Source: Vitrella brassicaformis CCMP3155
Lineage: Eukaryota > Protista > Chromerida
Direction: 5' to 3'
Length of the DNA stretch: 64,000 nt
NCBI GenBank assembly: GCA_001179505.1
Contig: CDMY01000708.1
Location: forward strand, 1-64,000
The translations under genes were made by a program, and so were the position numbers. Positions 3,936 through 15,400 of this stretch are shown in pieces (position 1 is the stretch's first letter; the number at the start of each line of letters is the position of its first letter). A model generated the notes under the pieces. It did not search any database. It was given only the letters and a program-made list of their open reading frames with translations, and had not been told where the DNA came from.

Positions 3936-4218
3936 AGCATAGAGGGAGAGCGAGATGAATTGAATGCACTCGCGAGCACGGTTTGACCGAGATCTCCCTT
4001 CCTGCTGGTCCGTACCTTACCTTCATCAGGGGACGGACTACGTTGATCCAGCATTCCTCCATGAGTGGCTCTGGCGCCTTGTTGCACCTCCATTGCGCCA
4101 GCCATGTGCTCAGGAAGGGTTCGTTGTACTTGTCGTGCGGCTGCAGCCACTGATGAGAGTCGGCGGGGAAGGGCAGATCTTTCACAACTGTCCACCGTGA
4201 GAAAGCGCGATGGCTCAT
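1000..4218 (-). CDS. Multi-exon hypothetical protein, probably alpha-helical (possible organellar helical-repeat protein); 3' end approximate
   Basis: Exon-like peptides separated by GT-AG microsatellite introns: MSHRAFSRWTVVKDLPF...; GGRLPVCTLPEVALAFAARPC...; LFRSSIEACSHRSLSHLTPRVVLGYARALLKL; GAQYIEDDEGYRG; YESLNNHDVGVLCNVLRQ; TLSHFHLFLPDAMDQLAHRLL...; RWIYVDRLLLLC. No family could be recognised. Confidence 0.55.
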
Positions 4219-4440
4219 AGAGCTCGTAGATCAGGTGTCTGGTCGTCCATCTGACCTGGCTCATGCAAGAGACGAAAAAAGGGCCTCCGTGAAACGCGCC
4301 CTTGAACGCAAGTTCTGGCGTTCGTTCATTTCCCCATCTCCCGCACTTTCACTCCCCGTTCTGTTGTTCCCATCCACCCGTAGCCTTTCTCCCATAGCCA
4401 TCCACCCGTTCCCCAGACTCAGTTCACCTCGCTCTCGATA

Positions 4441-5126
4441 ATGCCGATGCACATGAAGGTGGTGGCTGCCATCGTTGCTGCCCTCGCCCTTCTCTCCCTG
4501 CTGCCCCAGGCCAAGGCTCAAAGCGCCAAGAGTACGACTGCACAGGGGGGCGGGAAAAGACCAGCGAAAGGCCGCCCGCTTTCCATCCTGGCCGGTTCGA
4601 GCTCTTTGTACGCATGATCTGTGGTTGGGATGAGTGCAGGTTTCCTCAACATCCACCCTCCCACCGAGAAGCACCAGAAGGATCCCTTCTTGAGCCCTCT
4701 CCGCATCGAGGAGGCCCGAGAGGGGATGCCCGAGGTGACCTCCAACACCAAGCTCAAGCAATTCATCGACAACGTCCTCATACACGCATCCACCAATGAG
4801 GGCGGCACCGATTCTGCATGCAAAAGGTTTGGGTGATGGATTTTCTGTGGCGTAGATCTGGCCATTGGTGTGCCCTCTGTGTGGCGTGTGGCGTCTGTTG
4901 TGTGTGGGTGCAGGTGCCCCTGAACTGCATGGTGGCCAGTGACGAGGTGGAGGGGCTGGGGTGCTGTGAGATCGAGAAGCTCCATGGCGTCATGAAGAAC
5001 ACTCACTTTCACTTCTGCCTGACCAAGGACATCTGCAGCTTCTTCGACTCGCCGCAGATCACCCAGGAGCCTGGCCGAGGCGGATTCCAGCAGTACACAA
5101 TGACCAACTTCAAGGAGTTCGAATGA
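4441..5126 (+). CDS. Small secreted Cys-containing hypothetical protein (3 exons)
   Basis: Signal peptide MPMHMKVVAAIVAALALLSLLPQAKA-Q; exon 2 FLNIHPPTEKHQKDPF...DSACK; exon 3 ...DEVEGLGCCEIEKLHGVMKNTHFHFCLTKDICSFF...FKEFE*. The exon 2/3 junction phase is ambiguous. Confidence 0.65.
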
Positions 5127-5446
5127 AAATGACCCGGTCGAGAAGAAGGGCCCAGGAGGGGGCGGGGTGAGGGGGTACCACGCCGGTTTCTTTTCTTTTC
5201 CTTTCGTTCTTGTGTCGGTTCGGCTGGACGGTTTGATTTCACGGATGGATGGATGGATGGGGGATTTCTTTTGGCTTCACGAATGCAACGGACACATGAC
5301 CACCGGTTGGTTCCTTTCAAGCTCTTAGAGTCGGACATCAGCAATCGTCACACCCAATGTCACACACAGCGTCGCGCAATGTCACACGTTCACACCTGCC
5401 GACACCACACACACAGCTGCCATAGATCCCCCCGCTCACTCACGCC

Positions 5447-6770
5447 TCATGTTTCCTGTGTAGAGTCGTCAAAGCTGTCCCAGCTCTCGCCCCAGCTGCC
5501 GTCATCAGAGAAGCTATCGGAGACAGGCACGGTCTCTGTGAGCGCTTCAGTTGCCACCGGGGTGCTGGCCGTCATCTCGCCGGTCTCACATCGCCTTGCT
5601 ATATACACCAACAACTCACGAGACACAAGTGACTCGGTGTGTGTGTTTTCGTGTGTGTGTGTGTGTGTGTGTGTGTCCTTTGTTAGGATGCAGCTCCCGC
5701 TCCCTCACCAAAGTCAAAGGCCCCTGCGAACCGGTCATACAGCCAGGCTTCCATCCCGCCCTCCTGCAGATCTTTCCAGGCTGCTAAATTCCAGCTTTTT
5801 GAGATGGGCTTGCCCTCTTGGCCCTCGGTCAGAAACGAGTTCCCCGGACACACCCTGAAGGGATTCTTGCTGATATCTTTCAGCGTCGTGGGTGGCTCCG
5901 CACAGGCCTCGTCGAGCGGCTCGTTGGTTTGTGTCTGTGTCTCGCCTTCAGGGATCCTCCATGCGTACTCGTTGGCTATACACACGCCCCACCTGACAAT
6001 GCTATGACGGCCGGCAAAAAGAGATTTGTAGGCCTCGAAGCCGCGCTGCTTTTTGCGGTCACCGGGCTTTTGGTACTCGCATGTCTTGTCTTTGCAGAAG
6101 GTCGCCATGATCTCTTCGTTGCTAAGGTCGTCCATCATTGTGCTGGCCCAAATGGGGACATTCTGCGGTAAGGGGCTCTGTCTGCTCGTCCAATGGTAGC
6201 CGACACCTGTGTGTGTGCATGAGCAGAGGGATTTGGTCGTTGGGCTGGGCTGCTACGCGTCTTTCCCTCCATCTTCCTTGCTTACGTACATGTGAAGTGA
6301 GGATCACATTTGCTTTCCCTTGTCGGAGGCAGGAACTGCAGCGTCCCCTTCCTCCCTCCTTGCTCTGTCCCGGCGTAGAAGGCACAAAGCTGGCCCTCGG
6401 TCTTTATCTCGCCACAGCCGGGTACATGTACACCTTTCTCCCCGGCTTTTCCCTTCTCGGTCTTTCCTTTCTGCGGCTTCAGCTTTGCGAGTGCATTCAT
6501 GACTTTGCTTTTTCCGGCTTTGTCTGAGGGAGGTTTTGTTGGCGGCAAGGGTGGCGGCCTCTTCGTCGCAGTCGACCGCTGTTTTGTTGGCGGCGAGGGT
6601 GCCTGCCTTTTCTTCCCAGTCGACGGCTGCTGCACCTGCCCCTGATGAGGCTGCTTTGCGCCTTGTGGGGCTGGAGCTTGGCCGCCTTGGGGGCTGGTGC
6701 CACTGACTCTGTTGTCTTCTTGGGCGCGATGTGTTTTTCAGCAGCAGCAGCCCCTGCTGCTTCTGGGGCC
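5447..6770 (-). CDS. Cys-repeat-domain protein (one copy of the LCAFY/CVGY/WGVC domain) behind a P/K/A-rich stalk; 5' end not resolved
   Basis: ...PGCGEIKTEGQLCAFYAG...SKCDPHFT[C, phase-1 intron 6288-6207]VGYHWTS...PIWASTMMDDL...IVRWGVCIANEY...EACAEPP...FRVC...FDF | ARRCETGEM...DDSTQET* (TGA 5447-5449). Same motif order as the + strand paralogue at 7940-11334. Confidence 0.65.
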
Positions 6771-7939
6771 TGAGAGAGAGGAAGGAGAGAACCGACCCTC
6801 AGGGGTGCGTCAATCGAGCGTGGGTTTGTTCCCGCAGACCTTGCGTCTCCTCTCGTCTCTCCTGGGGCGGGGTGGTGCCGTTGGCACTTCTTCAGCGGGC
6901 TCTCCCGGACCTGCATGGTGGTGAGAAACGTGTCAGAGCAGAGAAGTCGCATGTTCGTATGGACGGCCGTGGATACCTTCGCCGGCGCCGTCGGGCTGTG
7001 TCGAAGTTTGTGGCGGCCGTGCTGATGGGTTGATGGCCTGGATCATCTTTCGACGTTGTTCCAAGTCTGGCGCTTGTGCTGGCGGGAGAAGGGCCTGCAT
7101 CACACCACACGACATCAGGAGGGAAAACCCCCGGGTGGAGAAAACAGACATGCAGCGACCGATTGGAGAGTCGTTTTCGGACTCACTGACCTTGCCTTTC
7201 TTCGGCGGGCTGTGGTCAGGTGGTGGGGAGGAAGGCTGATGGTGATGCAATGCGACCAGGGGCTTTCGCCATGCCCATCTGCAACCAATCAAAAAACACC
7301 ACAGGTTCGTCGTGCCGGCACTGCAAATTGCGGTGATGCATCAGAATCTATGCACTTGGAGGCGGTCGCGCCCTTTGCCGTCCGCCACGCAAGGCATGGG
7401 TGCAATGAGATGGTCAGCAGGAAGAGCCGCAGCATTAGGATGGCAGAGTGGTGGCAAGTAGTAGTTCTCCCTGCTTCTGGAGTTCTCCCTGCTTCTTCTG
7501 GATTCTGCTTCTTCTGTGACTGCCCCAGCCTTGCCCCCAGTCTGCATGCAATCGATCCACTGCATGCAGACTGGGCAAGTGGCGAATCCGTCTTATGCTT
7601 CCTAGCGAAGCCCGTTGCTGATCGGCATTGTTCAAGTCATCGGCAGCAGCTCTCCTCGCGGCAGTTTGCGGCAAAATGCGCGTGTCACAATGCCACAAAT
7701 TGCTGCCAGTGGCCATTGCATTTGTGGCAGCGGCACTTCCGCTGGCCAGCGGGAGAGTGCCCTTTGCTTCCCTTGATCGCAGGGCTCTGAATGAGACCTC
7801 GACAGTCGTCGCTGAGGGTGAGTCGCCCGGCGGTCTTTCTGCCATCGGCTTCTTTGCATGGCCAATGGGTGCATTGTTTGTTGTTTGCTGTCCCGTTTAT
7901 GTCCTGCCCAGAGACAGCCCAGCCGCAGTGGCGCAACCG

Positions 7940-10900
7940 CTACGCCCTCTGTGCCTTCTATGACCCCGAGGTAGGTATCATGCTGTGCTAATAGGAATCA
8001 TCCAGTGGCACCGATTTATGTGCTCGTGCGCAGGCCAAGGGGCACAGAGTGCCGACAGAGGCCGTCTCGTGCACCGCTGGCGGAGGGAAAACCCCATAAA
8101 CGCGGGACCCGGCCACATGTGAGAGGCCCACTTACCCATCAGTGCACATGGCATTGCAGAGACCAACCGTCTCCGTCTCGGCGTCTCTGTCCATCTGGCC
8201 TAGGTGTGGGTTACCGCTACACTTTGCCGGCGCACGGCCCCAAGTGGGTCAACGAAGTCATGCAGGCGATCCAAGCCAACACCCACAAGGGCCAGACCAT
8301 CCTGCACCGGGCCTTCATCACGGGCATCAAGGACAAGATCATCTACTGGGGCGTGTGCATGCCGTCCGAAGAGACGTCGACCAACACCTACTGCAAAGAG
8401 CCGCCCGCCAAGATGAAGGTGACCAAGGAGGGCACGGCCATCAGCGAGATGGTGGGAGAAAAAGGTCCGGTTCAGGGAGCGGATCCCATGGAGGCGACTT
8501 ACTGCATTGGCAAGGAGAAAGACTTCCCGCCAGACAAGGAGGGCAAGCTCGAGAAGTCGCTCAAAGAGGCCGCCGAAGACGAAGGCTTCATAATCCGGGG
8601 TTGGCTACCACACCACACACGTGTCTACTTGTCTACCTGTTCCCGCATCTCTGTGTGTGTGTGTGTGTGTGTGTGTGTCAGAGGAGCTGCAGGTGCAGAA
8701 ACTGGCGAGGCGAGAAAAAGAGCAGCTGTGTGCCTTCTACGATCCTGAGGCGAAGGACGACAAAGGGAAGGACCTTGTCCTCAAGAGCCCCAGACTCGCA
8801 TGCCAAGCCGGCCTCACGTGTATGTGTGTGTGTGCCTCCCGATCGATGGATCGATCATCGGAAAGAAGTCCACACGAGGCAGCAATGTCTCCTCCTCTCC
8901 TCTCTGTGTGTCTGTGTCAGGTGTGGGCGGTCCCACACCGTGGGCCGCCGAGGGCATCGAGGCCATCAAACGCAACAACAACAGAGAAGTCGGCCTCCTC
9001 CTCTTCGGCTTCACCACTCCCGATCACGCAAAGCATGTCTTCTGGGGCGTCTGCCGCCCGAAAGAAGAGGCGACCAACAAGGAGTGCGCTGGAAAGCCTG
9101 AAGACGTGTTCGTGACGACCTACAAGTACCATGAGACGCTCAAAGACAATAACCTCGCACCAAGGTGACCACGGAACTGACGGTGCTGGAGGGATCCACG
9201 TACTGCAAGGGCAAAAACGGCATGGACGGAGAATGGATGAATGGATGGATGGATGGTCTGTTAACTGAGTGAACGTTGGTTGCTCTGCTTTCAGATGCCG
9301 AGTTGAAAGAGCCCTTCAATGCAGCCGTGACGAGCGAGGGCTTCGTCATCGGGAGTAAGCCACATACCTGACCGAGAGAACTCAGCCATCCTCTGTCGAC
9401 TCGACTCAGGCAAGACCACAACGATCTCGGCCTACGGCAAGAGGGGCAGAGAGGAGCTGTGCGCCTTCTACGGCGAGGGCAAACCTGGTCTCCTCCAGAA
9501 GACCGACGCCTACACATGCAAAGAGAACACCAAATGTGCGTACGGACAGACGCACAGCCGCTCAGCCGACGCAACCATGGCTTTCTGCGTGTCGATCTGC
9601 AGGTGTGGGCTACAAGCTCTACTCCTTCTTCTTAAAACAGAAGGGCCCCTACACGTGGGCCGAGTTGGCCGAGGAGTCCATCAAGATGGGCAATAAGGAC
9701 GCCATCATCACCCTCGCCTTTGGGGACCAGGCCACCGACGAGGACCACATGTACTTCGGCGTGTGCATGCCCGAACCGGCCGACAAGTACTGCGGCAAGC
9801 CGATGAAGGCCCCTGTCAAGCCGCGCGGAAAAAAGGAGGGCACGGTGGACGTGTGTGAGGGCATTGAGGCTTCCGTCGATCCCAAAGACGGTGAGCAGTA
9901 GAGAGGGGAGGCAGGGAGACAGCAAATCTCCGTGTCTGTGTGTGGTTATGCAGTCTCTGCAGATGAGGAGGAGCTGAAGACGGCGCTCGAGAACGCCATC
10001 AAGGCAGTGGGGTTCAGGCTGAAAAGTGAGTATGTATGGGTGTTGTTCTCATGTATCCATCCATCCATGCATCCATGTTGGCTTGCAGCGATCCGCAAAG
10101 TCGGGACAACAAACTTCCCCATCGTGGAGCCTAGTAACCACACTTCCAAACCCACACTCACACCCACACCCGCACAGAGAGATGGCTGTATTCCGCAAAG
10201 GAGATAGATTCTCCTGAATGGTCTTGGCCACAGCCAACCGACGCTTGTGCCACTTGCAGGCGAGAAGAAGGAGAAGAAAGAGAAGGAGCCGATCGACACT
10301 GGCGTGAATGTGAACGACCGCAGGGCACAGTTCAACAAGGAAGGAGAAAGTACAGACACCGCCAAAAAGGCCATACGAGACACACACAGCACAACACACA
10401 AGACATGCACACATGCCTTCCTCTGTCTGTCTGTCTGTCTGTCTGGCTGTGGTGTCTCTGTCCATTACAGCACCCAAGATGCCCCACCAGCACCAGAAGA
10501 GGGAGGGAATCAAACCTGTTATCAAACCAGGTATCCGACCCAGCCATGCCATCATCTCTCTCTCTCTCTCTCTCTGTCCCTCTGTGTGTGTGGCTCTGTT
10601 GGCCCTGTGCAGCCTCCAACCTCGGCCCCGAGGCCAAGTACAAGCATGGCGGCAGTTCCAGATACCAGGGAGAGCGCCGCGGCCAGGCCAAACCCATCAA
10701 GGGCTACGAATCCCGGACCGGCAAGTACGAGGGCGGCAGTTCCAGATACCAGGGACAGCGGCCCGGCCAGGCCCCACCCATCAAGGGCTACGAATCCCGG
10801 ACCGGCAAGTACGTGAGCGGCGGGTCCAAATACGAGGGACAGCGGCCCGGCCAGGCCAAACCCACGGAGGGCTACGAATCCAGCACCGGCAAGTACAAGG

Positions 10901-11334
10901 GCGTCAAGTCCGAATACCAGGGACAGCGGCCCGGCCTCTCACGGACGAGAGAGGCCCGGTCAAGCCAGCGTCCCACGGCTTGGGGTACGGCAAGTACACC
11001 CACAAGGGCGGCGCAGAGTTCAACAAAGGGGCTGGCGGAGGGGAAGGTGAGTGACCATGTCAACGTGTGTTCGGAGGGAAGGGAGGGGGGGGCACAGACT
11101 GGCGGAGATACGAAGCCTGTCGATCCATCCATGGATACACACTGCACTGCACTGCCCTCTGCTTTGCTGCGCATGTGTGTGCAGCCCCCAAGGGAGAGGC
11201 TGGATTGCCGGCTGCAGCAGAAGACGAGACCAGTGGGACCGATGAGGGCGGTGAAGGGACCCCCACAGAGACCAAGGAAGAGCCGCATCCCCCCATCGTC
11301 GCCGATAAGGGGGACGACGTCAGCGGAGACACCA
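7940..11334 (+). CDS. Multi-exon protein with three tandem Cys-patterned domains and a Gly/Tyr/Lys-rich repeat tail; apparently disrupted (possible pseudogene or assembly errors); both ends uncertain
   Basis: Repeated LCAFY (about 7947, 8725, 9457), CVG (8204, 8921, 9603), [WF]GVC, C-x2-3-P, [YV]C and GF motifs, with GT-AG introns at equivalent positions. In-frame TAA at 8097-8099; frame changes near 9135-9165 and near 10935. Confidence 0.6.
10636..10935 (+). repeat. Coding tandem repeat, about 3.5 copies of an 84-nt (28 aa) unit
   Basis: AAGTAC anchors at 10636, 10723, 10807 and 10891 (spacing 87, 84, 84). The unit is about KYEGGSSRYQGQRPGQAPPIKGYESRTG. Confidence 0.9.
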
Positions 11335-12657
11335 GTGAGTGACCTACCTTTAAGACTGGCTGCCTGGCTGAGAGTGTGTGTGTGTGTGTGTGTAAGCTGA
11401 GGGAGAGAAGGTCCTCGTTGAGGATGAGGAACTTCGAGAGGAGGAGGTGAAACCCTCCAAACCTGGACGCATCAGCAGACGACGTAACCAACCAGTCAAA
11501 GACAGACAGACAGACAGGCGGAGAGACGTGCTCTTTCTCTGTGCGTGTGTGTGTGCGAGAGCACATACCTATGTATGCCATCAGTTCCGGGATGCTTCAT
11601 CCAATGGGCACCATTGCGGAAGGTGAGGGACAAGCTCGGCCGGCCGGACCACACTGCAAATGGTCATTTCCGTGACAATCTCTCTTGTGTGTGTGTGTGT
11701 GTGTGACGCCAGCCACGGACCGCCTGAACGACGAGGGCCCGCACGGTGGGAGCCAAAGCACGACAGAGAGAGAGACACAGAAAGACAGAGAGACGGAGAC
11801 TTGATTGATACGATCCGTGTCGGTGTGTGCAGAGTCCTTCATTACCATGGCCGACGACAGTGGGAGAGCACACCAAACAGACACATACACACCGAGAAGG
11901 ACGACAGCATGGGTGCGTGTGATATCTTGTGTGCGTTGCGTCAGAGTCTGTGCACCGCCACCTGCCGCCCTCGCACTCCACTCGCCGCCACACCCACTAC
12001 ACCGGCAACCACAGTGAGAGCACACTCACGAACACATCTAACGACACTCTCCTACCGGCATGTGTGTGTGTGTGTGTGTGTGTGATGGCCGGTGTGCAGG
12101 TGACTGACTGAGTCAGACTGACCGACCGAAAATTGAAGGAAGCAGGCAGCGAATGAGTCCACTCAGGAGAGAGAGGAGAGGAGAGGAGATACAGATGGAT
12201 GGATGGATGGCCTGACCGATCGAAGGATTCATGAGATGGATGAATGATGGCATGCGGCAGTCTGAGTGAGTGGCTGACTGACTGAGTGTCTGAGTGCTGC
12301 AAGAAACGAAAGCCAGCTGAGTGAGTGAGGGACAAGAGACGCACAGCGATGGATGGATGGATGGATGTGGGAGGGTGTGTGGACGGTCGGACGATCGACA
12401 CTCTCCAAAGTGGCTTGCAGCACGGCACACGTGCAGATGTCCATCGCTATCCAGCAAACCACACATCACACGCACGCGGTGCACCACATGCGGCGCGGCC
12501 CGCAAGGCTACCACCCAGCTGTGAACCGTCCGTCCACCTGGCTGGCTGTGGGTGTCTTCTGTTTGATGGTCCCATGACGGGACAGCGATGTTCATGGGCA
12601 CTGACTGATGCCCATGGCAACACCGTCCCGTCGTGCAACAGACCAGAAGCTGCCTCT

Positions 12658-15400
12658 TCACGCCAGTGCCTCAGCAGCAGTGGCCTTGGTGTGCATCGCC
12701 ACCTGCTGGCCTCTCCTGTCCTGTGTGGCTGAGGGGGAAGGGCCGGGGGGCGGTGGGGGTGTGCTGGTGCGCTTGACGCGCAGCAGATATGCCCGCACCT
12801 CATCCGCATCCACGGGCAAAGCGTCGAGGAATGACTGATGCACACGTAAGTAAACGAATGAATGGCATGGCCACACACAACACAACACACAGAGGTGGAA
12901 AGGGGAACCGCTTTCGCATGGTGCCATGGTGCCATGGGGTGTGCATACCTCAGTCACATAGCGCAGTGGCACATGGACAGCTGCTCGCCCAGCACGCCTG
13001 AGGGCAGCAGGCAGCACACACACACACAGAAGCGCCATTCGGCGTTCGTCCCATCAATCGTGTCTCACCCTCACCCATCACACACATACCGTGCAATAGT
13101 GGCGAGGCATCCCACGGCCTGTCCCCTGAGTGGGTCGCCGTAGCTGACCTCCTCTATCAAAATGGAGCACACCATCAGCATGTGAGCCAACACACGCTCG
13201 CTCAACCCAAGAGACGCCAGGGAGCACTGCTCCTCAGCCTGGACCAGGAAATCAGCCAGGCTCTGCGTTGCCTTCAGCTGACCAACCACATGGACGGACG
13301 ACACGACCACACACACTTCCACTTCATCTTTTCGTTCAGTTCAGACAAGGGGCTTCCTTCCGACATATTTACTTACCAGCAGCAGCTGCATCTCCCGCCT
13401 CAGGCCGTGTTTGCGCAGCACGTCCAGTGTCTTGAGCAGGATGTGGGCGATGCTGGACGCCTCAAGAGGCGGCGGGGCCGACGCCGACGGGCCGTCTTGG
13501 ACGCTCAGACGGTAGCACAGTAGCTCGCAATAACCGCTGATCGCCTGCCGAGGCACACACAGAGAGGGTGGGGCGGCTGTGGTTGATTCTCTATCTTGCT
13601 GGGGCTCACTCACCTCGGCAGTGTTGGGTTCCATTCTGCGGATGGTGTTTGTGAGCCGCCTGACCTGCTCGTCGGTCATCATTTCGACAGCCCTCTCCTC
13701 CATAAGCCCCTTGACACGCCCATGCAGCGCATCGGCATCGGCCGCAGAGTACCCCAACTGCGTCAAGTTGGCCACCGCCAGAGCCAGAGACGTCAGGTCG
13801 TCCATGTCGAAGGCCCCGAGCCGCTCGGCAGTCGGGTGTGGGCCGCCCCCCACGACCCTGTCAATGTGCTCCCCCACTACCTTGACCGTCTTGTGCTGTC
13901 GCGGCAAACGCAGCTCGCTCAGTGACAGCATCAGCTGGGCGAACTCCTTGGCCATCAGTGCCTTGTGGCCGCCACTCGCACCCTCCCTTTCTCTCTCCCG
14001 CGCCACTCTCTGTCCTTCCGGCGATGCGGCGCTGGCCGGGGCTTCCTGTGGACCCTGTGACGCCGCGTTCGTCAGCCGGGGTAGCTGCGCCGTCACCTTG
14101 AAGGCAATGGCCTCGCTGACGTCCTTGACGAGGCCCTCCTGCTCCTTCTGGTGGTTGGCCGACGACAATGCACAGCCGTCGACGACGGCGATCAGGCCCG
14201 GGATGGGCAGACTCAGACACGTGCTGAGCAGGTGGTGGGCGAGCCGGTGGCTGCCGCTCTCCGTGTCGCCTCCCTCTCCAGACGATAGGCTGCTGCTGCT
14301 GCCGCCGGAGGATGGTGCTGAATCGTCCTCCGACTGCTTGTCGAACTGCAGGAGGGCCGCCCGTCTGTTGAGAGAGAAGAGATCCCGCCCACTCCACTGG
14401 CCGACAGACAGGCCCGTCAACACGCTCGATAGCAGCCGGTTGAACAGCTCCGGGTCTCGCGAGCCGATGGCATGCATGGCGGAGGGAAAAAGCTTCAGCT
14501 CGCTCATGTCCATTGCCGGCAGTGCGTCGACGAGGTGTTTCTTGAGGGTGTTGCGTGTTGCGAAATCCAGCTGGTCGAGGTGGGCGGCCGCGTGGATGGC
14601 GCGGCAGATGAGGGCATCGGATGGGGCGAGCGAGGGAGAGGGGGAGGGAGAGGGGCTGGTCAGCTGTTTGTTGTCCTTGGCGAGAGCCGCAATGTCAGGC
14701 ATCCTCTGGATGATCTGTCGGCTGATTCTGTGTGGGAGGTTCTCCGTCTGCCACGTCTTGTCCCACAGCTGCAGATTCTTCGCCGCCTTTGCCTGCATCC
14801 ATCGCATTGCATTGCGCCCCATCCGCACACACACAATGACTTCCGTGTATGGTGTGCGGCACTCATTGTCAGTCAGACCTTGAGCAGTGCGTATGAGGCC
14901 CCGATGTCCACGAGAGCAGGAAGGTCCAGCCCCGTCAGCCGTGCAGACACCTCGGGATTGAACACCGCCTGCATCTCCTTGGTGAACCGCCGCGAATACA
15001 CCAGCACCGACACTGCTGCAGCCAACTCGCTCCCTGACAGGGACCGCGCAGACGTCCGCAGCTTGCTCATCAGATTGGCCATCTCGCCTGTGTCCTCCAG
15101 CAGGACGTCCCGCCTCACTGCAGCGATGGAGGCGCACACACGGACGGCCTGTGAGGGGCTCAGCGAGGCCGCCAGGCCGTCCAGCCGATGAGCTATCACC
15201 CTCCAGGTCTGGCGGGAGTCATGCCGGTCGGCCGTCAGCCGCTCCACGAGGGCGAGAAAGGGGGATGCGTCCAGCTGAGGGATCTGCAGCACATCAAGCG
15301 CCCGGGTAGTGGATGAAGCGAAGTGACGGCCATGAGTGAAGGGCAGTGGGATGAGAGCCGGGAGCGCAGGAGGTCTCAGTGGGCGATAGATAGACGCCAT
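12658..15400 (-). CDS. Probable mitochondrion-targeted alpha-helical repeat protein (HPR/FASTK-like character, family unassigned)
   Basis: N-terminus MASIYRPLRPPALPALIPLPFTHGRHFASSTT is presequence-like (RHF/AS). It has a large exon of about 1.2 kb (AKAAKNLQLWDK...RRMEPNTAE) and later exons LLCYRLSVQD..., GQLKATQSLADFL..., QSFLDALPVDADEVRAYLL...EALA*. Leu/Ala-rich helical composition. Confidence 0.7.

What the first reader, a model, noticed from the sequence alone, without database searches (positions are those of the whole stretch)
5447..10027. Unrecognised Cys-patterned repeat domain in four copies across two divergently oriented paralogues, possibly a PAN/apple-like adhesin family
The same motif order recurs: [EQA]LCAFY-x(n)-C-x5-CVG[YG]-x-W-x(n)-[WF]GVC-x-C-x2-3-P-x(n)-C-x-GF. 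It appears three times on + (QLCAFYDPE...ACQAGLTCVGG; ELCAFYGE...TCKENTKCVGYK; YWGVCMP, FWGVCRP, YFGVCMP) and once on - (QLCAFYAG...KCDPHFTCVGYHW...RWGVCIA...EACAEPP). Every copy has a phase-1 intron splitting the TGT of the CVG cysteine (donors 8119, 8820, 9536 and 6289 on -), which strongly supports exon-based duplication. The eeC...C-x5-C-x-G[FY]...C spacing resembles PAN/apple domains (as in apicomplexan micronemal adhesins such as MIC4) with a long insertion; the fold call is inference.
Basis: partly seen in the sequence, partly recalled or inferred. Interest (0 to 1): 0.75.

Follow-up and report, generated by a model that had tools for sequence, protein, structure and literature searches.

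The report
Orphan cysteine-rich repeat module in Vitrella
Two head-to-head genes of the alga Vitrella brassicaformis carry four copies of a probably secreted, six-cysteine module of about 160-180 residues that has no detectable relatives anywhere, does not test as a PAN/apple domain, and is partly mis-annotated and partly broken.

Summary
LCAFY occurs four times in the 64-kb window, all in this locus. Each copy is followed by C-x5-C, a phase-1 intron splitting the TGT codon (T|gt...ag|GTGT), then VG[YG], [WF]GVC and two more cysteines. Each copy ends in a helix-like "GF" tail followed by another phase-1 donor. Three modules lie in tandem in a + gene (GenBank protein CEM30840.1) and one in a divergent - gene (CEM30824.1) of Vitrella brassicaformis CCMP3155. 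The two start codons are 240 bp apart.

The PAN/apple reading is not supported. Pfam finds no family. PAN_1 gives at least 144 six-frame matches in this genome but none here. Profile-profile probability against Vitrella PAN domains is 0.06%. The PAN cysteine spacing and size do not fit.

A profile search of 1.84 billion protein representatives returned only the two Vitrella proteins plus two spurious bacterial repeat proteins. Both AlphaFold2 runs failed (pLDDT 33-38), so the fold is unknown.

New points:
- Both genes have signal-peptide-like first exons.
- The deposited models omit half of two modules.
- The + gene carries an in-frame TAA (8097-8099) and a 1-nt frame break (9151-9163).

Most likely this is a lineage-restricted secreted module family expanded by duplication of an exon cassette. 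Its function is unknown.

The parts
7676..7817 (+). Exon 1 of the + gene. It starts at an ATG and has a signal-peptide-like N-terminus (MRVSQCHK-LLPVAIAFVAAALPL-ASG). It ends in phase 1 and is not part of the deposited CDS.
   Evidence: maximum Kyte-Doolittle (KD) hydropathy over a 15-residue window is 2.45 at residues 9-23, and the donor reads G|gtgagt.
7912..7970 (+). Module A, N-exon part 1 (..RYALCAFYDPE), with a phase-0 donor gtaggt. An alternative phase-1 donor lies 4 nt downstream, at 7975.
8034..8118 (+). Module A, N-exon part 2. It carries C-x15-C instead of C-x5-C and an in-frame TAA at 8097-8099. It ends T|gt.
   Evidence: one stop in the coding frame. No AG occurs between the TAA and the donor, so canonical splicing cannot remove the stop while keeping this junction.
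8204..8599 (+). Module A, main and tail exon (VGYRY..YWGVCMP..YCKEPP..TYCIGK..EDEGFIIR|G). It ends in phase 1. The deposited CDS starts inside it, at ATG 8260.
8682..8819 (+). Module B, N-exon (..EQLCAFYDPE..ACQAGLT C). It ends T|gt.
8921..9255 (+). Module B, main exon (VGGPTPW..FWGVCRP..ECAGKP..// KVTTELTVLEGSTYCKGKNG). The reading frame breaks by 1 nt within 9151-9163. The deposited model avoids the break by splicing 9164 to 9335, which deletes the sixth Cys.
   Evidence: the exons of unit B sum to 533 nt, which is 2 mod 3, whereas units A and C sum to 0 mod 3.
9295..9354 (+). Module B, tail exon (DAELKEPFNAAVTSEGFVIG|S), with a phase-1 donor gtaagc.
9410..9535 (+). Module C, N-exon (..REELCAFYGEG..TCKENTK C). 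It ends T|gt.
9603..9890 (+). Module C, main exon (VGYKLY..YFGVCMP..YCGKP..DVCEG..). It ends in phase 1.
9963..10025 (+). Module C, tail exon (EEELKTALENAIKAVGFRLK), with a phase-1 donor gtgagt. The deposited model uses an acceptor 9 nt upstream.
10089..12045 (+). Remaining exons of the deposited + CDS. They encode a Lys/Glu-rich linker, 3.4 tandem 28-residue Tyr/Gly/Lys/Gln-rich units (84-nt repeat, 10648-10936) and an Arg/Pro/Ser-rich end. There is no hydrophobic anchor.
7436..7675 (.). The 240-bp stretch between the two divergent start codons, presumably a shared promoter region. It holds a 20+20-nt palindrome (7536-7575) containing two TGCATGCA octamers, and a 16-nt direct repeat.
7355..7435 (-). 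Exon 1 of the - gene, with an ATG and a short signal-peptide-like start (MLRLFLLTISLHPCLAW).
6638..7277 (-). Span covering exons 2-5 of the deposited - CDS: 7277-7191, 7094-6975, 6908-6840 and 6769-6638. They encode a Pro/Lys/Ala-rich linker. All three frames are open over about 6500-6770, so the link to the LCAFY exon is unresolved.
6290..6440 (-). Minus-strand module, N-exon (..GQLCAFYAGTEQ..KCDPHFT C). It ends T|gt at 6290/6289. Its 5' boundary is unknown, but the frame is open up to about 6737. The deposited model treats it as intron.
5709..6206 (-). Minus-strand module, main and tail exon (VGYHW..RWGVCIA..ACAEPP..RVCPG..FAGAFDF|G). It has a phase-1 donor gtgagg at 5708. The deposited model enters it only at 6144 and reads through the donor to a stop at 5683.
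5447..5598 (-). Predicted last exon of the - gene (A RRCETGEMT...SWGESWDSFDDSTQET, stop TGA 5449-5447). It is in frame with the phase-1 donor at 5709/5708. This exon is inferred, not annotated.

Best explanation
The locus is a head-to-head pair of nuclear, intron-bearing genes of Vitrella brassicaformis. Both encode a taxonomically restricted cysteine-rich module of about 160-180 residues.

The module reads: LCAFY, then 21-27 residues, then C-x5-C, VG[YG], W plus a helix, [WF]GVC, 9-25 residues, then C-x2-4-P, one more Cys, and an amphipathic 'ELK...GF' tail. It has six conserved Cys, so probably three disulfides.

Each module is a cassette bounded by phase-1 introns, with an internal phase-1 intron in the third Cys codon. 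The + gene grew to three modules by tandem duplication of this cassette. The single-module - gene is an older inverted paralogue that shares a 240-bp promoter region.

Both genes start with signal-peptide-like exons and have no membrane anchor. The products are therefore most likely soluble secreted or cell-wall/matrix proteins. This is inferred. A structural or adhesive role is a further guess, based on the low-complexity Lys/Pro linkers and the Tyr/Gly/Lys-rich 28-residue tandem repeats.

The + gene is damaged in modules A (TAA) and B (1-nt frame break). It is either recently decaying or rescued by alternative splicing.

Shown here: the repeats, the intron phases, the lesions, and the absence of detectable relatives and of PAN similarity. 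Inferred: secretion, disulfides and function.
For: - Four copies with a shared motif order and shared intron positions.
- Unit lengths of 540, 533 and 477 nt between phase-1 boundaries.
- The deposited CDS confirms the Cys-codon introns of B and C.
- Identity: CEM30840.1/A0A0G4GL96 and CEM30824.1/A0A0G4GL78 of V. brassicaformis CCMP3155.
- Only this locus matches in the whole genome.
- Only these two proteins are credible hits among 1.84 billion representatives. Word searches were blank, and Pfam and PDB sequence searches were blank.
- Hydrophobic N-terminal exons and no other hydrophobic segment.
- The coding frames of the remaining exons carry no stops over 19-131 codons, while most alternative frames have 1-3.
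Against: - Exon use, expression and the signal-peptide link are therefore unverified.
- The deposited models leave out the signal exon of the + gene and the LCAFY exon of the - gene.
- The + gene has a stop and a frame break, so its product may not be made as modelled.
- No phase-compatible splice path from the 5' exons of the - gene to its LCAFY exon has been proven; all three frames are open there.
- The structure predictions were useless (pLDDT 33.5 and 37.9), so 'new fold' and 'three disulfides' are untested.
- The profile covered only the main exon, and unannotated genes in other alveolates cannot be seen in protein libraries.
Confidence: 0.7

Rival explanations
1. The module is a very divergent PAN/apple domain with a long insertion, making these proteins apicomplexan-style adhesins.
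For: There is a C-x5-C followed by an aromatic residue two positions later (C-V-G-Y). This loosely recalls the PAN core C-x5-C-x-x-F-x-Y seen in Vitrella PAN domains. Vitrella is rich in PAN proteins.
Against: - No PAN family matches at E<=1.
- None of the 144 or more PF00024 matches in the genome lies in this locus.
- hhalign probability is 0.05-0.06%.
- The C-x3-C partner and the C-x-L strand about 11 residues after the third Cys are both missing.
- The unit is two to three times the PAN length.
Confidence: 0.06
2. The + gene, and possibly the whole locus, is a decaying pseudogene. On this view the repeats are relics of a once-functional family and no protein with this module is made from the + strand today.
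For: - An in-frame TAA at 8097-8099 separates the signal exon from the rest.
- Canonical splicing cannot remove the TAA while keeping the conserved junction.
- There is a 1-nt frame break in module B.
- Gene predictors had to start at an internal ATG and skip conserved sequence.
Against: - All other exons stay open in the homologous frame over 19-131 codons, while most alternative frames have 1-3 stops. Any decay must therefore be very recent.
- Module C and the minus-strand module are intact.
- An in-frame bypass of the TAA exon exists on paper: donor 7975 to acceptor 8203, giving a 459-nt unit.
- Sequence or assembly error has not been excluded.
Confidence: 0.35
3. The module is a remote relative of the double-psi beta-barrel (expansin/RlpA/barwin-like) domains. 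The suggestion rests on the resemblance of LCAFYG...C-V-G-Y to the ATFYG...A-C-G-Y signature, which is recalled from memory only.
For: Only the motif resemblance. No tool result supports it.
Against: Pfam gave no DPBB, barwin or cerato-platanin hit on the exons or on the spliced proteins. PF03330 found nothing anywhere in the genome. The fold could not be tested.
Confidence: 0.04

Closest known systems
PAN/apple domains (Pfam PF00024 PAN_1, PF14295 PAN_4), e.g. in apicomplexan micronemal adhesins and many Vitrella secreted proteins
   Same: Both are cysteine-patterned modules that occur in tandem and sit behind signal-peptide-like N-termini. Both contain a C-x5-C followed closely by an aromatic residue.
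   Different: - No HMM or profile-profile similarity.
- The PAN C-x3-C-x5-C...C-x-L spacing is absent.
- The unit is 159-180 codons against about 70-90 residues for PAN.
- The fold is untested.
Taxonomically restricted (orphan) secreted cysteine-rich repeat proteins of protists in general
   Same: - No relatives outside one species.
- Signal-peptide-like start.
- An even number of conserved Cys per module.
- Expansion by tandem duplication of phase-symmetric exons.
- Low-complexity linkers.
   Different: This is a descriptive class and not a family. This particular module (LCAFY / C-x5-C-VGY / WGVC) is not in Pfam, and its proteins are unnamed in GenBank and UniProt. No paper cites their accession numbers.
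Bacterial CARDB and SprB-type repeat proteins (the two non-Vitrella hits of the profile search)
   Same: They share a short motif, Y-[YW]-G-[VA]-C followed by 8-12 residues and then N-x-C, or T-x-T-Y-C-x-x-x-P. It recurs in each of their repeats.
   Different: The matches span only about 30 profile positions. They reach their E-values by summing 4-7 weak repeats. The proteins belong to unrelated, well-defined families (CARDB PF07705, SprB PF13573). I treat them as chance or convergent motif matches.

Membership tests
PAN/apple (Pfam PF00024 and relatives) | Match to a PAN family HMM at or near its curated cut-off | tested here: not met
   hmmscan of six exon translations and of the spliced database proteins P0001 and P0002 found no PAN family at E<=1. 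A six-frame PF00024 search of the whole genome gave at least 144 matches over cut-off, none of them on contig C708 at 5.4-10 kb.
PAN/apple (Pfam PF00024 and relatives) | Core cysteine spacing C-x3-C-x5-C-x2-[FY]-x-[YF], then about 6 residues and C-x-L, within about 70-90 residues | tested here: not met
   Six Vitrella PAN domains show invariant C23, C27, C33, C45 and L47. The module has only the C-x5-C. The preceding Cys lies 21-27 residues upstream and the next one 45-70 residues downstream. Unit length is 159-180 codons.
PAN/apple (Pfam PF00024 and relatives) | Profile-profile similarity to bona fide PAN domains | tested here: not met
   hhalign of P0001, and of the main-exon alignment A1, against the Vitrella PAN alignment A4 gave probability 0.06% and 0.05% with one aligned column.
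PAN/apple (Pfam PF00024 and relatives) | Fold: five-stranded antiparallel sheet packed on one helix, locked by the conserved disulfides | tested here: inconclusive
   AlphaFold2 on P0001 gave pLDDT 33.5, and on the main-exon alignment 37.9. The ESM Atlas models have pLDDT 0.34-0.37. No meaningful fold search was possible.
Double-psi beta-barrel (DPBB_1 PF03330, expansin/RlpA-like) | Match to the family HMM | tested here: not met
   No hit at E<=1 on the exons or on P0001/P0002. PF03330 found no match anywhere in the genome, although it rang in 4 control genomes.
Secreted protein (classical signal peptide) | N-terminal positively charged, hydrophobic and small-residue cleavage regions, joined in frame to the mature protein | tested here: inconclusive
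   Both genes have such first exons. In the + gene, however, an in-frame TAA lies between that exon and the modules. In the - gene the splice path to the LCAFY exon is unresolved. No signal-peptide predictor or transcript data were available.

The most novel reading that the evidence does not exclude
The LCAFY/CVGY/WGVC module is a previously undescribed disulfide-stabilised extracellular fold confined to Vitrella, or to a narrow chromerid lineage. It would be caught at an early stage of its evolution: four copies at a single locus, expanded by duplication of a phase-1 exon cassette, with some copies already being lost.
Probability: 0.35. Interest if true: 0.45.

Novelty: new variant of a known kind. 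Interest (0 to 1): 0.3.

Why it matters
If real and expressed, this is a clean small example of how a lineage-restricted extracellular module arises and multiplies. It involves one locus, four copies, phase-symmetric exons and a shared divergent promoter, in the closest free-living relatives of apicomplexan parasites.

It also shows two practical things. Automated gene models (CEM30840.1 and CEM30824.1) can cut a repeated module in half. Comparing paralogous exons recovers signal-peptide exons and missing domain halves.

It does not add a new member to the PAN/apple adhesin repertoire. Orphan cysteine-rich proteins are common in protist genomes, so the biological surprise is modest.

Tried and rejected
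1. PAN/apple membership was rejected on HMM, spacing, size and profile-profile tests.
2. The DPBB/expansin-like idea came from a remembered motif and has no support.
3. Structure-based identification failed. AlphaFold2 on the spliced database protein P0001 and on the four-row main-exon alignment gave pLDDT 33.5 and 37.9. I ran no fold search because matches to such models are meaningless. The ESM Atlas rows all have TM<=0.35 on models of pLDDT about 0.35 and were discarded.
4. More paralogues were sought in the genome with the main-exon profile, the N-exon profile and single exons. None lies outside this locus.
5. Relatives were sought elsewhere, all without credible result:
   - The word search with exon A and with P0001 was blank.
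   - The profile search of 1.84 billion representatives gave only the two Vitrella proteins plus a CARDB and a SprB repeat protein, judged spurious.
   - The metagenome contig scan found nothing.
   - PDB sequence searches were blank.
The 90% clusters of both proteins have one member each.
7. A splicing escape for the frame break in module B that keeps homology does not exist. The window between the flanking stops is 13 nt and has no usable GT-AG pair (reading).
8. Rfam found no RNA family in 4000-13000.
9. Pfam found nothing on three neighbouring ORFs.


Full report
**What is there**

The window is scaffold C708 of a 72.7-Mb, 1064-scaffold genome. The two database proteins encoded here are CEM30840.1/A0A0G4GL96 (743 aa, + strand) and CEM30824.1/A0A0G4GL78 (316 aa, - strand) of Vitrella brassicaformis CCMP3155. 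Both are 'unnamed/uncharacterized'. According to that paper, the gene models came from Augustus with RNA-seq intron hints.

**The observation**

A six-frame scan finds LCAFY four times in 64 kb (7947, 8726, 9457 on +; 6389 on -). Each is followed 400-600 nt later by [WF]GVC.

I found a second shared intron. After the tail motif (EGFIIR|G, EGFVIG|S, VGFRLK|x, GAFDF|G) every copy has a phase-1 GT donor, at 8599/8600, 9354/9355, 10025/10026 and 5709/5708 on -. The module is therefore a cassette bounded by phase-1 introns. The exon lengths sum to 540 nt (A) and 477 nt (C), both multiples of three.

Pairwise scores of the main exons against 500 shuffles:

| Pair | z |
|---|---|
| A-B | 15.9 |
| B-C | 13.0 |
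| A-M | 8.3 |
| A-C | 7.1 |

The N-exons give z=3.3-11.3. The repeat is real, and six cysteines are conserved.

**Gene anatomy**

The + gene has an upstream exon (7676-7817) that starts with ATG and reads MRVSQCHKLLPVAIAFVAAALPLASG, a signal-peptide-like start. It ends in phase 1 and joins module A. The - gene starts at 7435 with MLRLFLLTISLHPCLAW. The two ATGs are 240 bp apart, head to head.

Neither protein has another hydrophobic segment. Downstream of the three modules the + protein carries:
- a Lys/Glu linker;
- 3.4 tandem 28-residue Tyr/Gly/Lys/Gln-rich units (84-nt repeat, 10648-10936);
- an Arg/Pro/Ser-rich end.

**Disagreements with the deposited models**

1. CEM30840.1 starts at an internal ATG (8260) inside module A. 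It omits the signal exon and both N-exons of A.
2. CEM30840.1 splices 9164 to 9335 in module B, which removes the sixth cysteine and most of the tail.
3. CEM30824.1 splices 6638 to 6144. This treats the LCAFY exon and the first 20 codons of the main exon as intron. It also reads through the conserved phase-1 donor at 5709 to a stop at 5683. Splicing at that donor would instead reach an in-frame exon at 5598-5447 encoding an acidic tail.

Points 1 and 2 have visible causes:
- Module A's second N-exon has an in-frame TAA at 8097-8099. No AG lies between it and the donor, so canonical splicing cannot remove it while keeping the conserved junction.
- Module B's frame breaks by one base inside a 13-nt window (9151-9163) bounded by stops in the two frames. 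Its unit length is 533 nt, which is 2 mod 3.

A bypass of the TAA exon is possible on paper: donor 7975 to acceptor 8203 gives a 459-nt unit lacking the C-x5-C pair. It is untested. In the - gene all three frames are open between about 6500 and 6770, so I could not fix the splice path from the linker exons to the LCAFY exon.

**Relatives**

- Pfam finds nothing credible on six exon translations or on the two spliced proteins.
- Searches of the whole genome with exon A, the minus-strand exon, the main-exon profile and the N-exon profile return only this locus.
- The word search with exon A and with the 743-aa protein is blank.
- The main-exon profile, run by HMMER over 1.84 billion representatives, returns the two Vitrella proteins (E 1e-105 and 2e-38). 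It also returns two bacterial repeat proteins (E 4e-8 and 1e-4) that match about 30 profile positions in each of 4-7 repeats. These are SprB-type and CARDB proteins, and I regard them as motif noise.
- PDB sequence searches and a metagenome contig scan are blank.
- No paper cites the accession numbers.

The profile covered only the main exon, and unannotated genes in other alveolates would be invisible. 'No relatives' therefore means none among predicted proteins at this sensitivity.

**PAN/apple test**

PF00024 finds at least 144 six-frame matches over its cut-off in this genome, so the model works well on Vitrella exons. None of the matches is in this locus.

Six of those PAN domains align with invariant C-x3-C-x5-C, then about 11 residues, then C-x-L. 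The module here has only the C-x5-C, and its other cysteines are far away. hhalign of the spliced protein and of the family alignment against the PAN alignment gives 0.06% and 0.05%. Membership is therefore not supported.

The fold could not be judged:
- AlphaFold2 gave pLDDT 33.5 for the whole spliced protein.
- It gave 37.9 for the main exon with its three paralogues as the alignment.
- The ESM Atlas models are equally poor.

I ran no fold search on such models. A remembered resemblance to the expansin/RlpA double-psi-barrel signature also has no support.

All searches of my models were done exon by exon, by reference. The only spliced sequences used were the database's own P0001 and P0002.

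**Reading**

Most likely (about 0.7) this is a Vitrella-restricted family of secreted, disulfide-bonded modules, expanded by tandem duplication of a phase-1 exon cassette and encoded by two divergent genes with a shared promoter region. Secretion, three disulfides and a wall/matrix or adhesive role are inferences from the first exons, the even cysteine count and the low-complexity tails.

The + gene is either recently decaying (about 0.35) or rescued by alternative splicing or sequence error. The intactness of every other exon says any decay is young.

The find is a tidy example of a young orphan module and of annotation repair by paralogue comparison. Orphan cysteine-rich proteins are common in protists, hence the modest score.

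Noticed in passing
window 7536-7575: A 20+20-nt palindrome (90% complementary, no spacer) holds two TGCATGCA octamers and sits in the middle of the 240-bp stretch between the two divergent start codons. The octamer is not enriched in the window overall (4 found, 3.1 expected), but two of the four are here. From memory, TGCATGCA is a known apicomplexan promoter motif; I did not verify that for chromerids.
   Followed up: partly
window 7463-7516: Two short direct repeats lie in the 5' region of the - gene: AGTTCTCCCTGCTTCT twice at 18-nt spacing, and CTGCTTCTTCTG twice.
   Followed up: no
window 10648-10936: An 84-nt tandem repeat (3.4 copies, 87% matches) encodes 28-residue Tyr/Gly/Lys/Gln/Arg-rich units (..GYESRTGKYEGGSSRYQGQRPGQAKPIK..) in the C-terminal tail of the + protein. 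Its composition recalls cross-linkable structural or adhesive proteins; that comparison is inference only.
   Followed up: partly
window 6500-6770 (- strand): All three reading frames of the minus strand are open for about 270 nt across a GC-rich low-complexity stretch that contains a 48-nt x2 repeat (6533-6629). The frame used by the deposited model cannot be checked by ORF logic alone.
   Followed up: partly
window 9225-9257, 5244-5262, 10050-10075: (GGAT)n microsatellite tracts recur in the locus. One of them is translated as ..EWMNGWMDG.. and supplies the donor of module B's main exon. (GT)n/(TG)n tracts sit in introns at 5637-5676 and 8652-8678.
   Followed up: no
genome-wide (e.g. L010 = C618:29393-32602, L011 = C291:117506-120706): The Vitrella genome holds at least 144 six-frame PAN_1 matches over the Pfam cut-off, often several in tandem on one scaffold (C347, C573, C248, C324). 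This is a very large PAN repertoire for a free-living alga.
   Followed up: partly
window 13341-15137 (- strand): A 598-codon uninterrupted ORF has no Pfam match. It is unusually long for a single exon in this intron-rich genome.
   Followed up: partly
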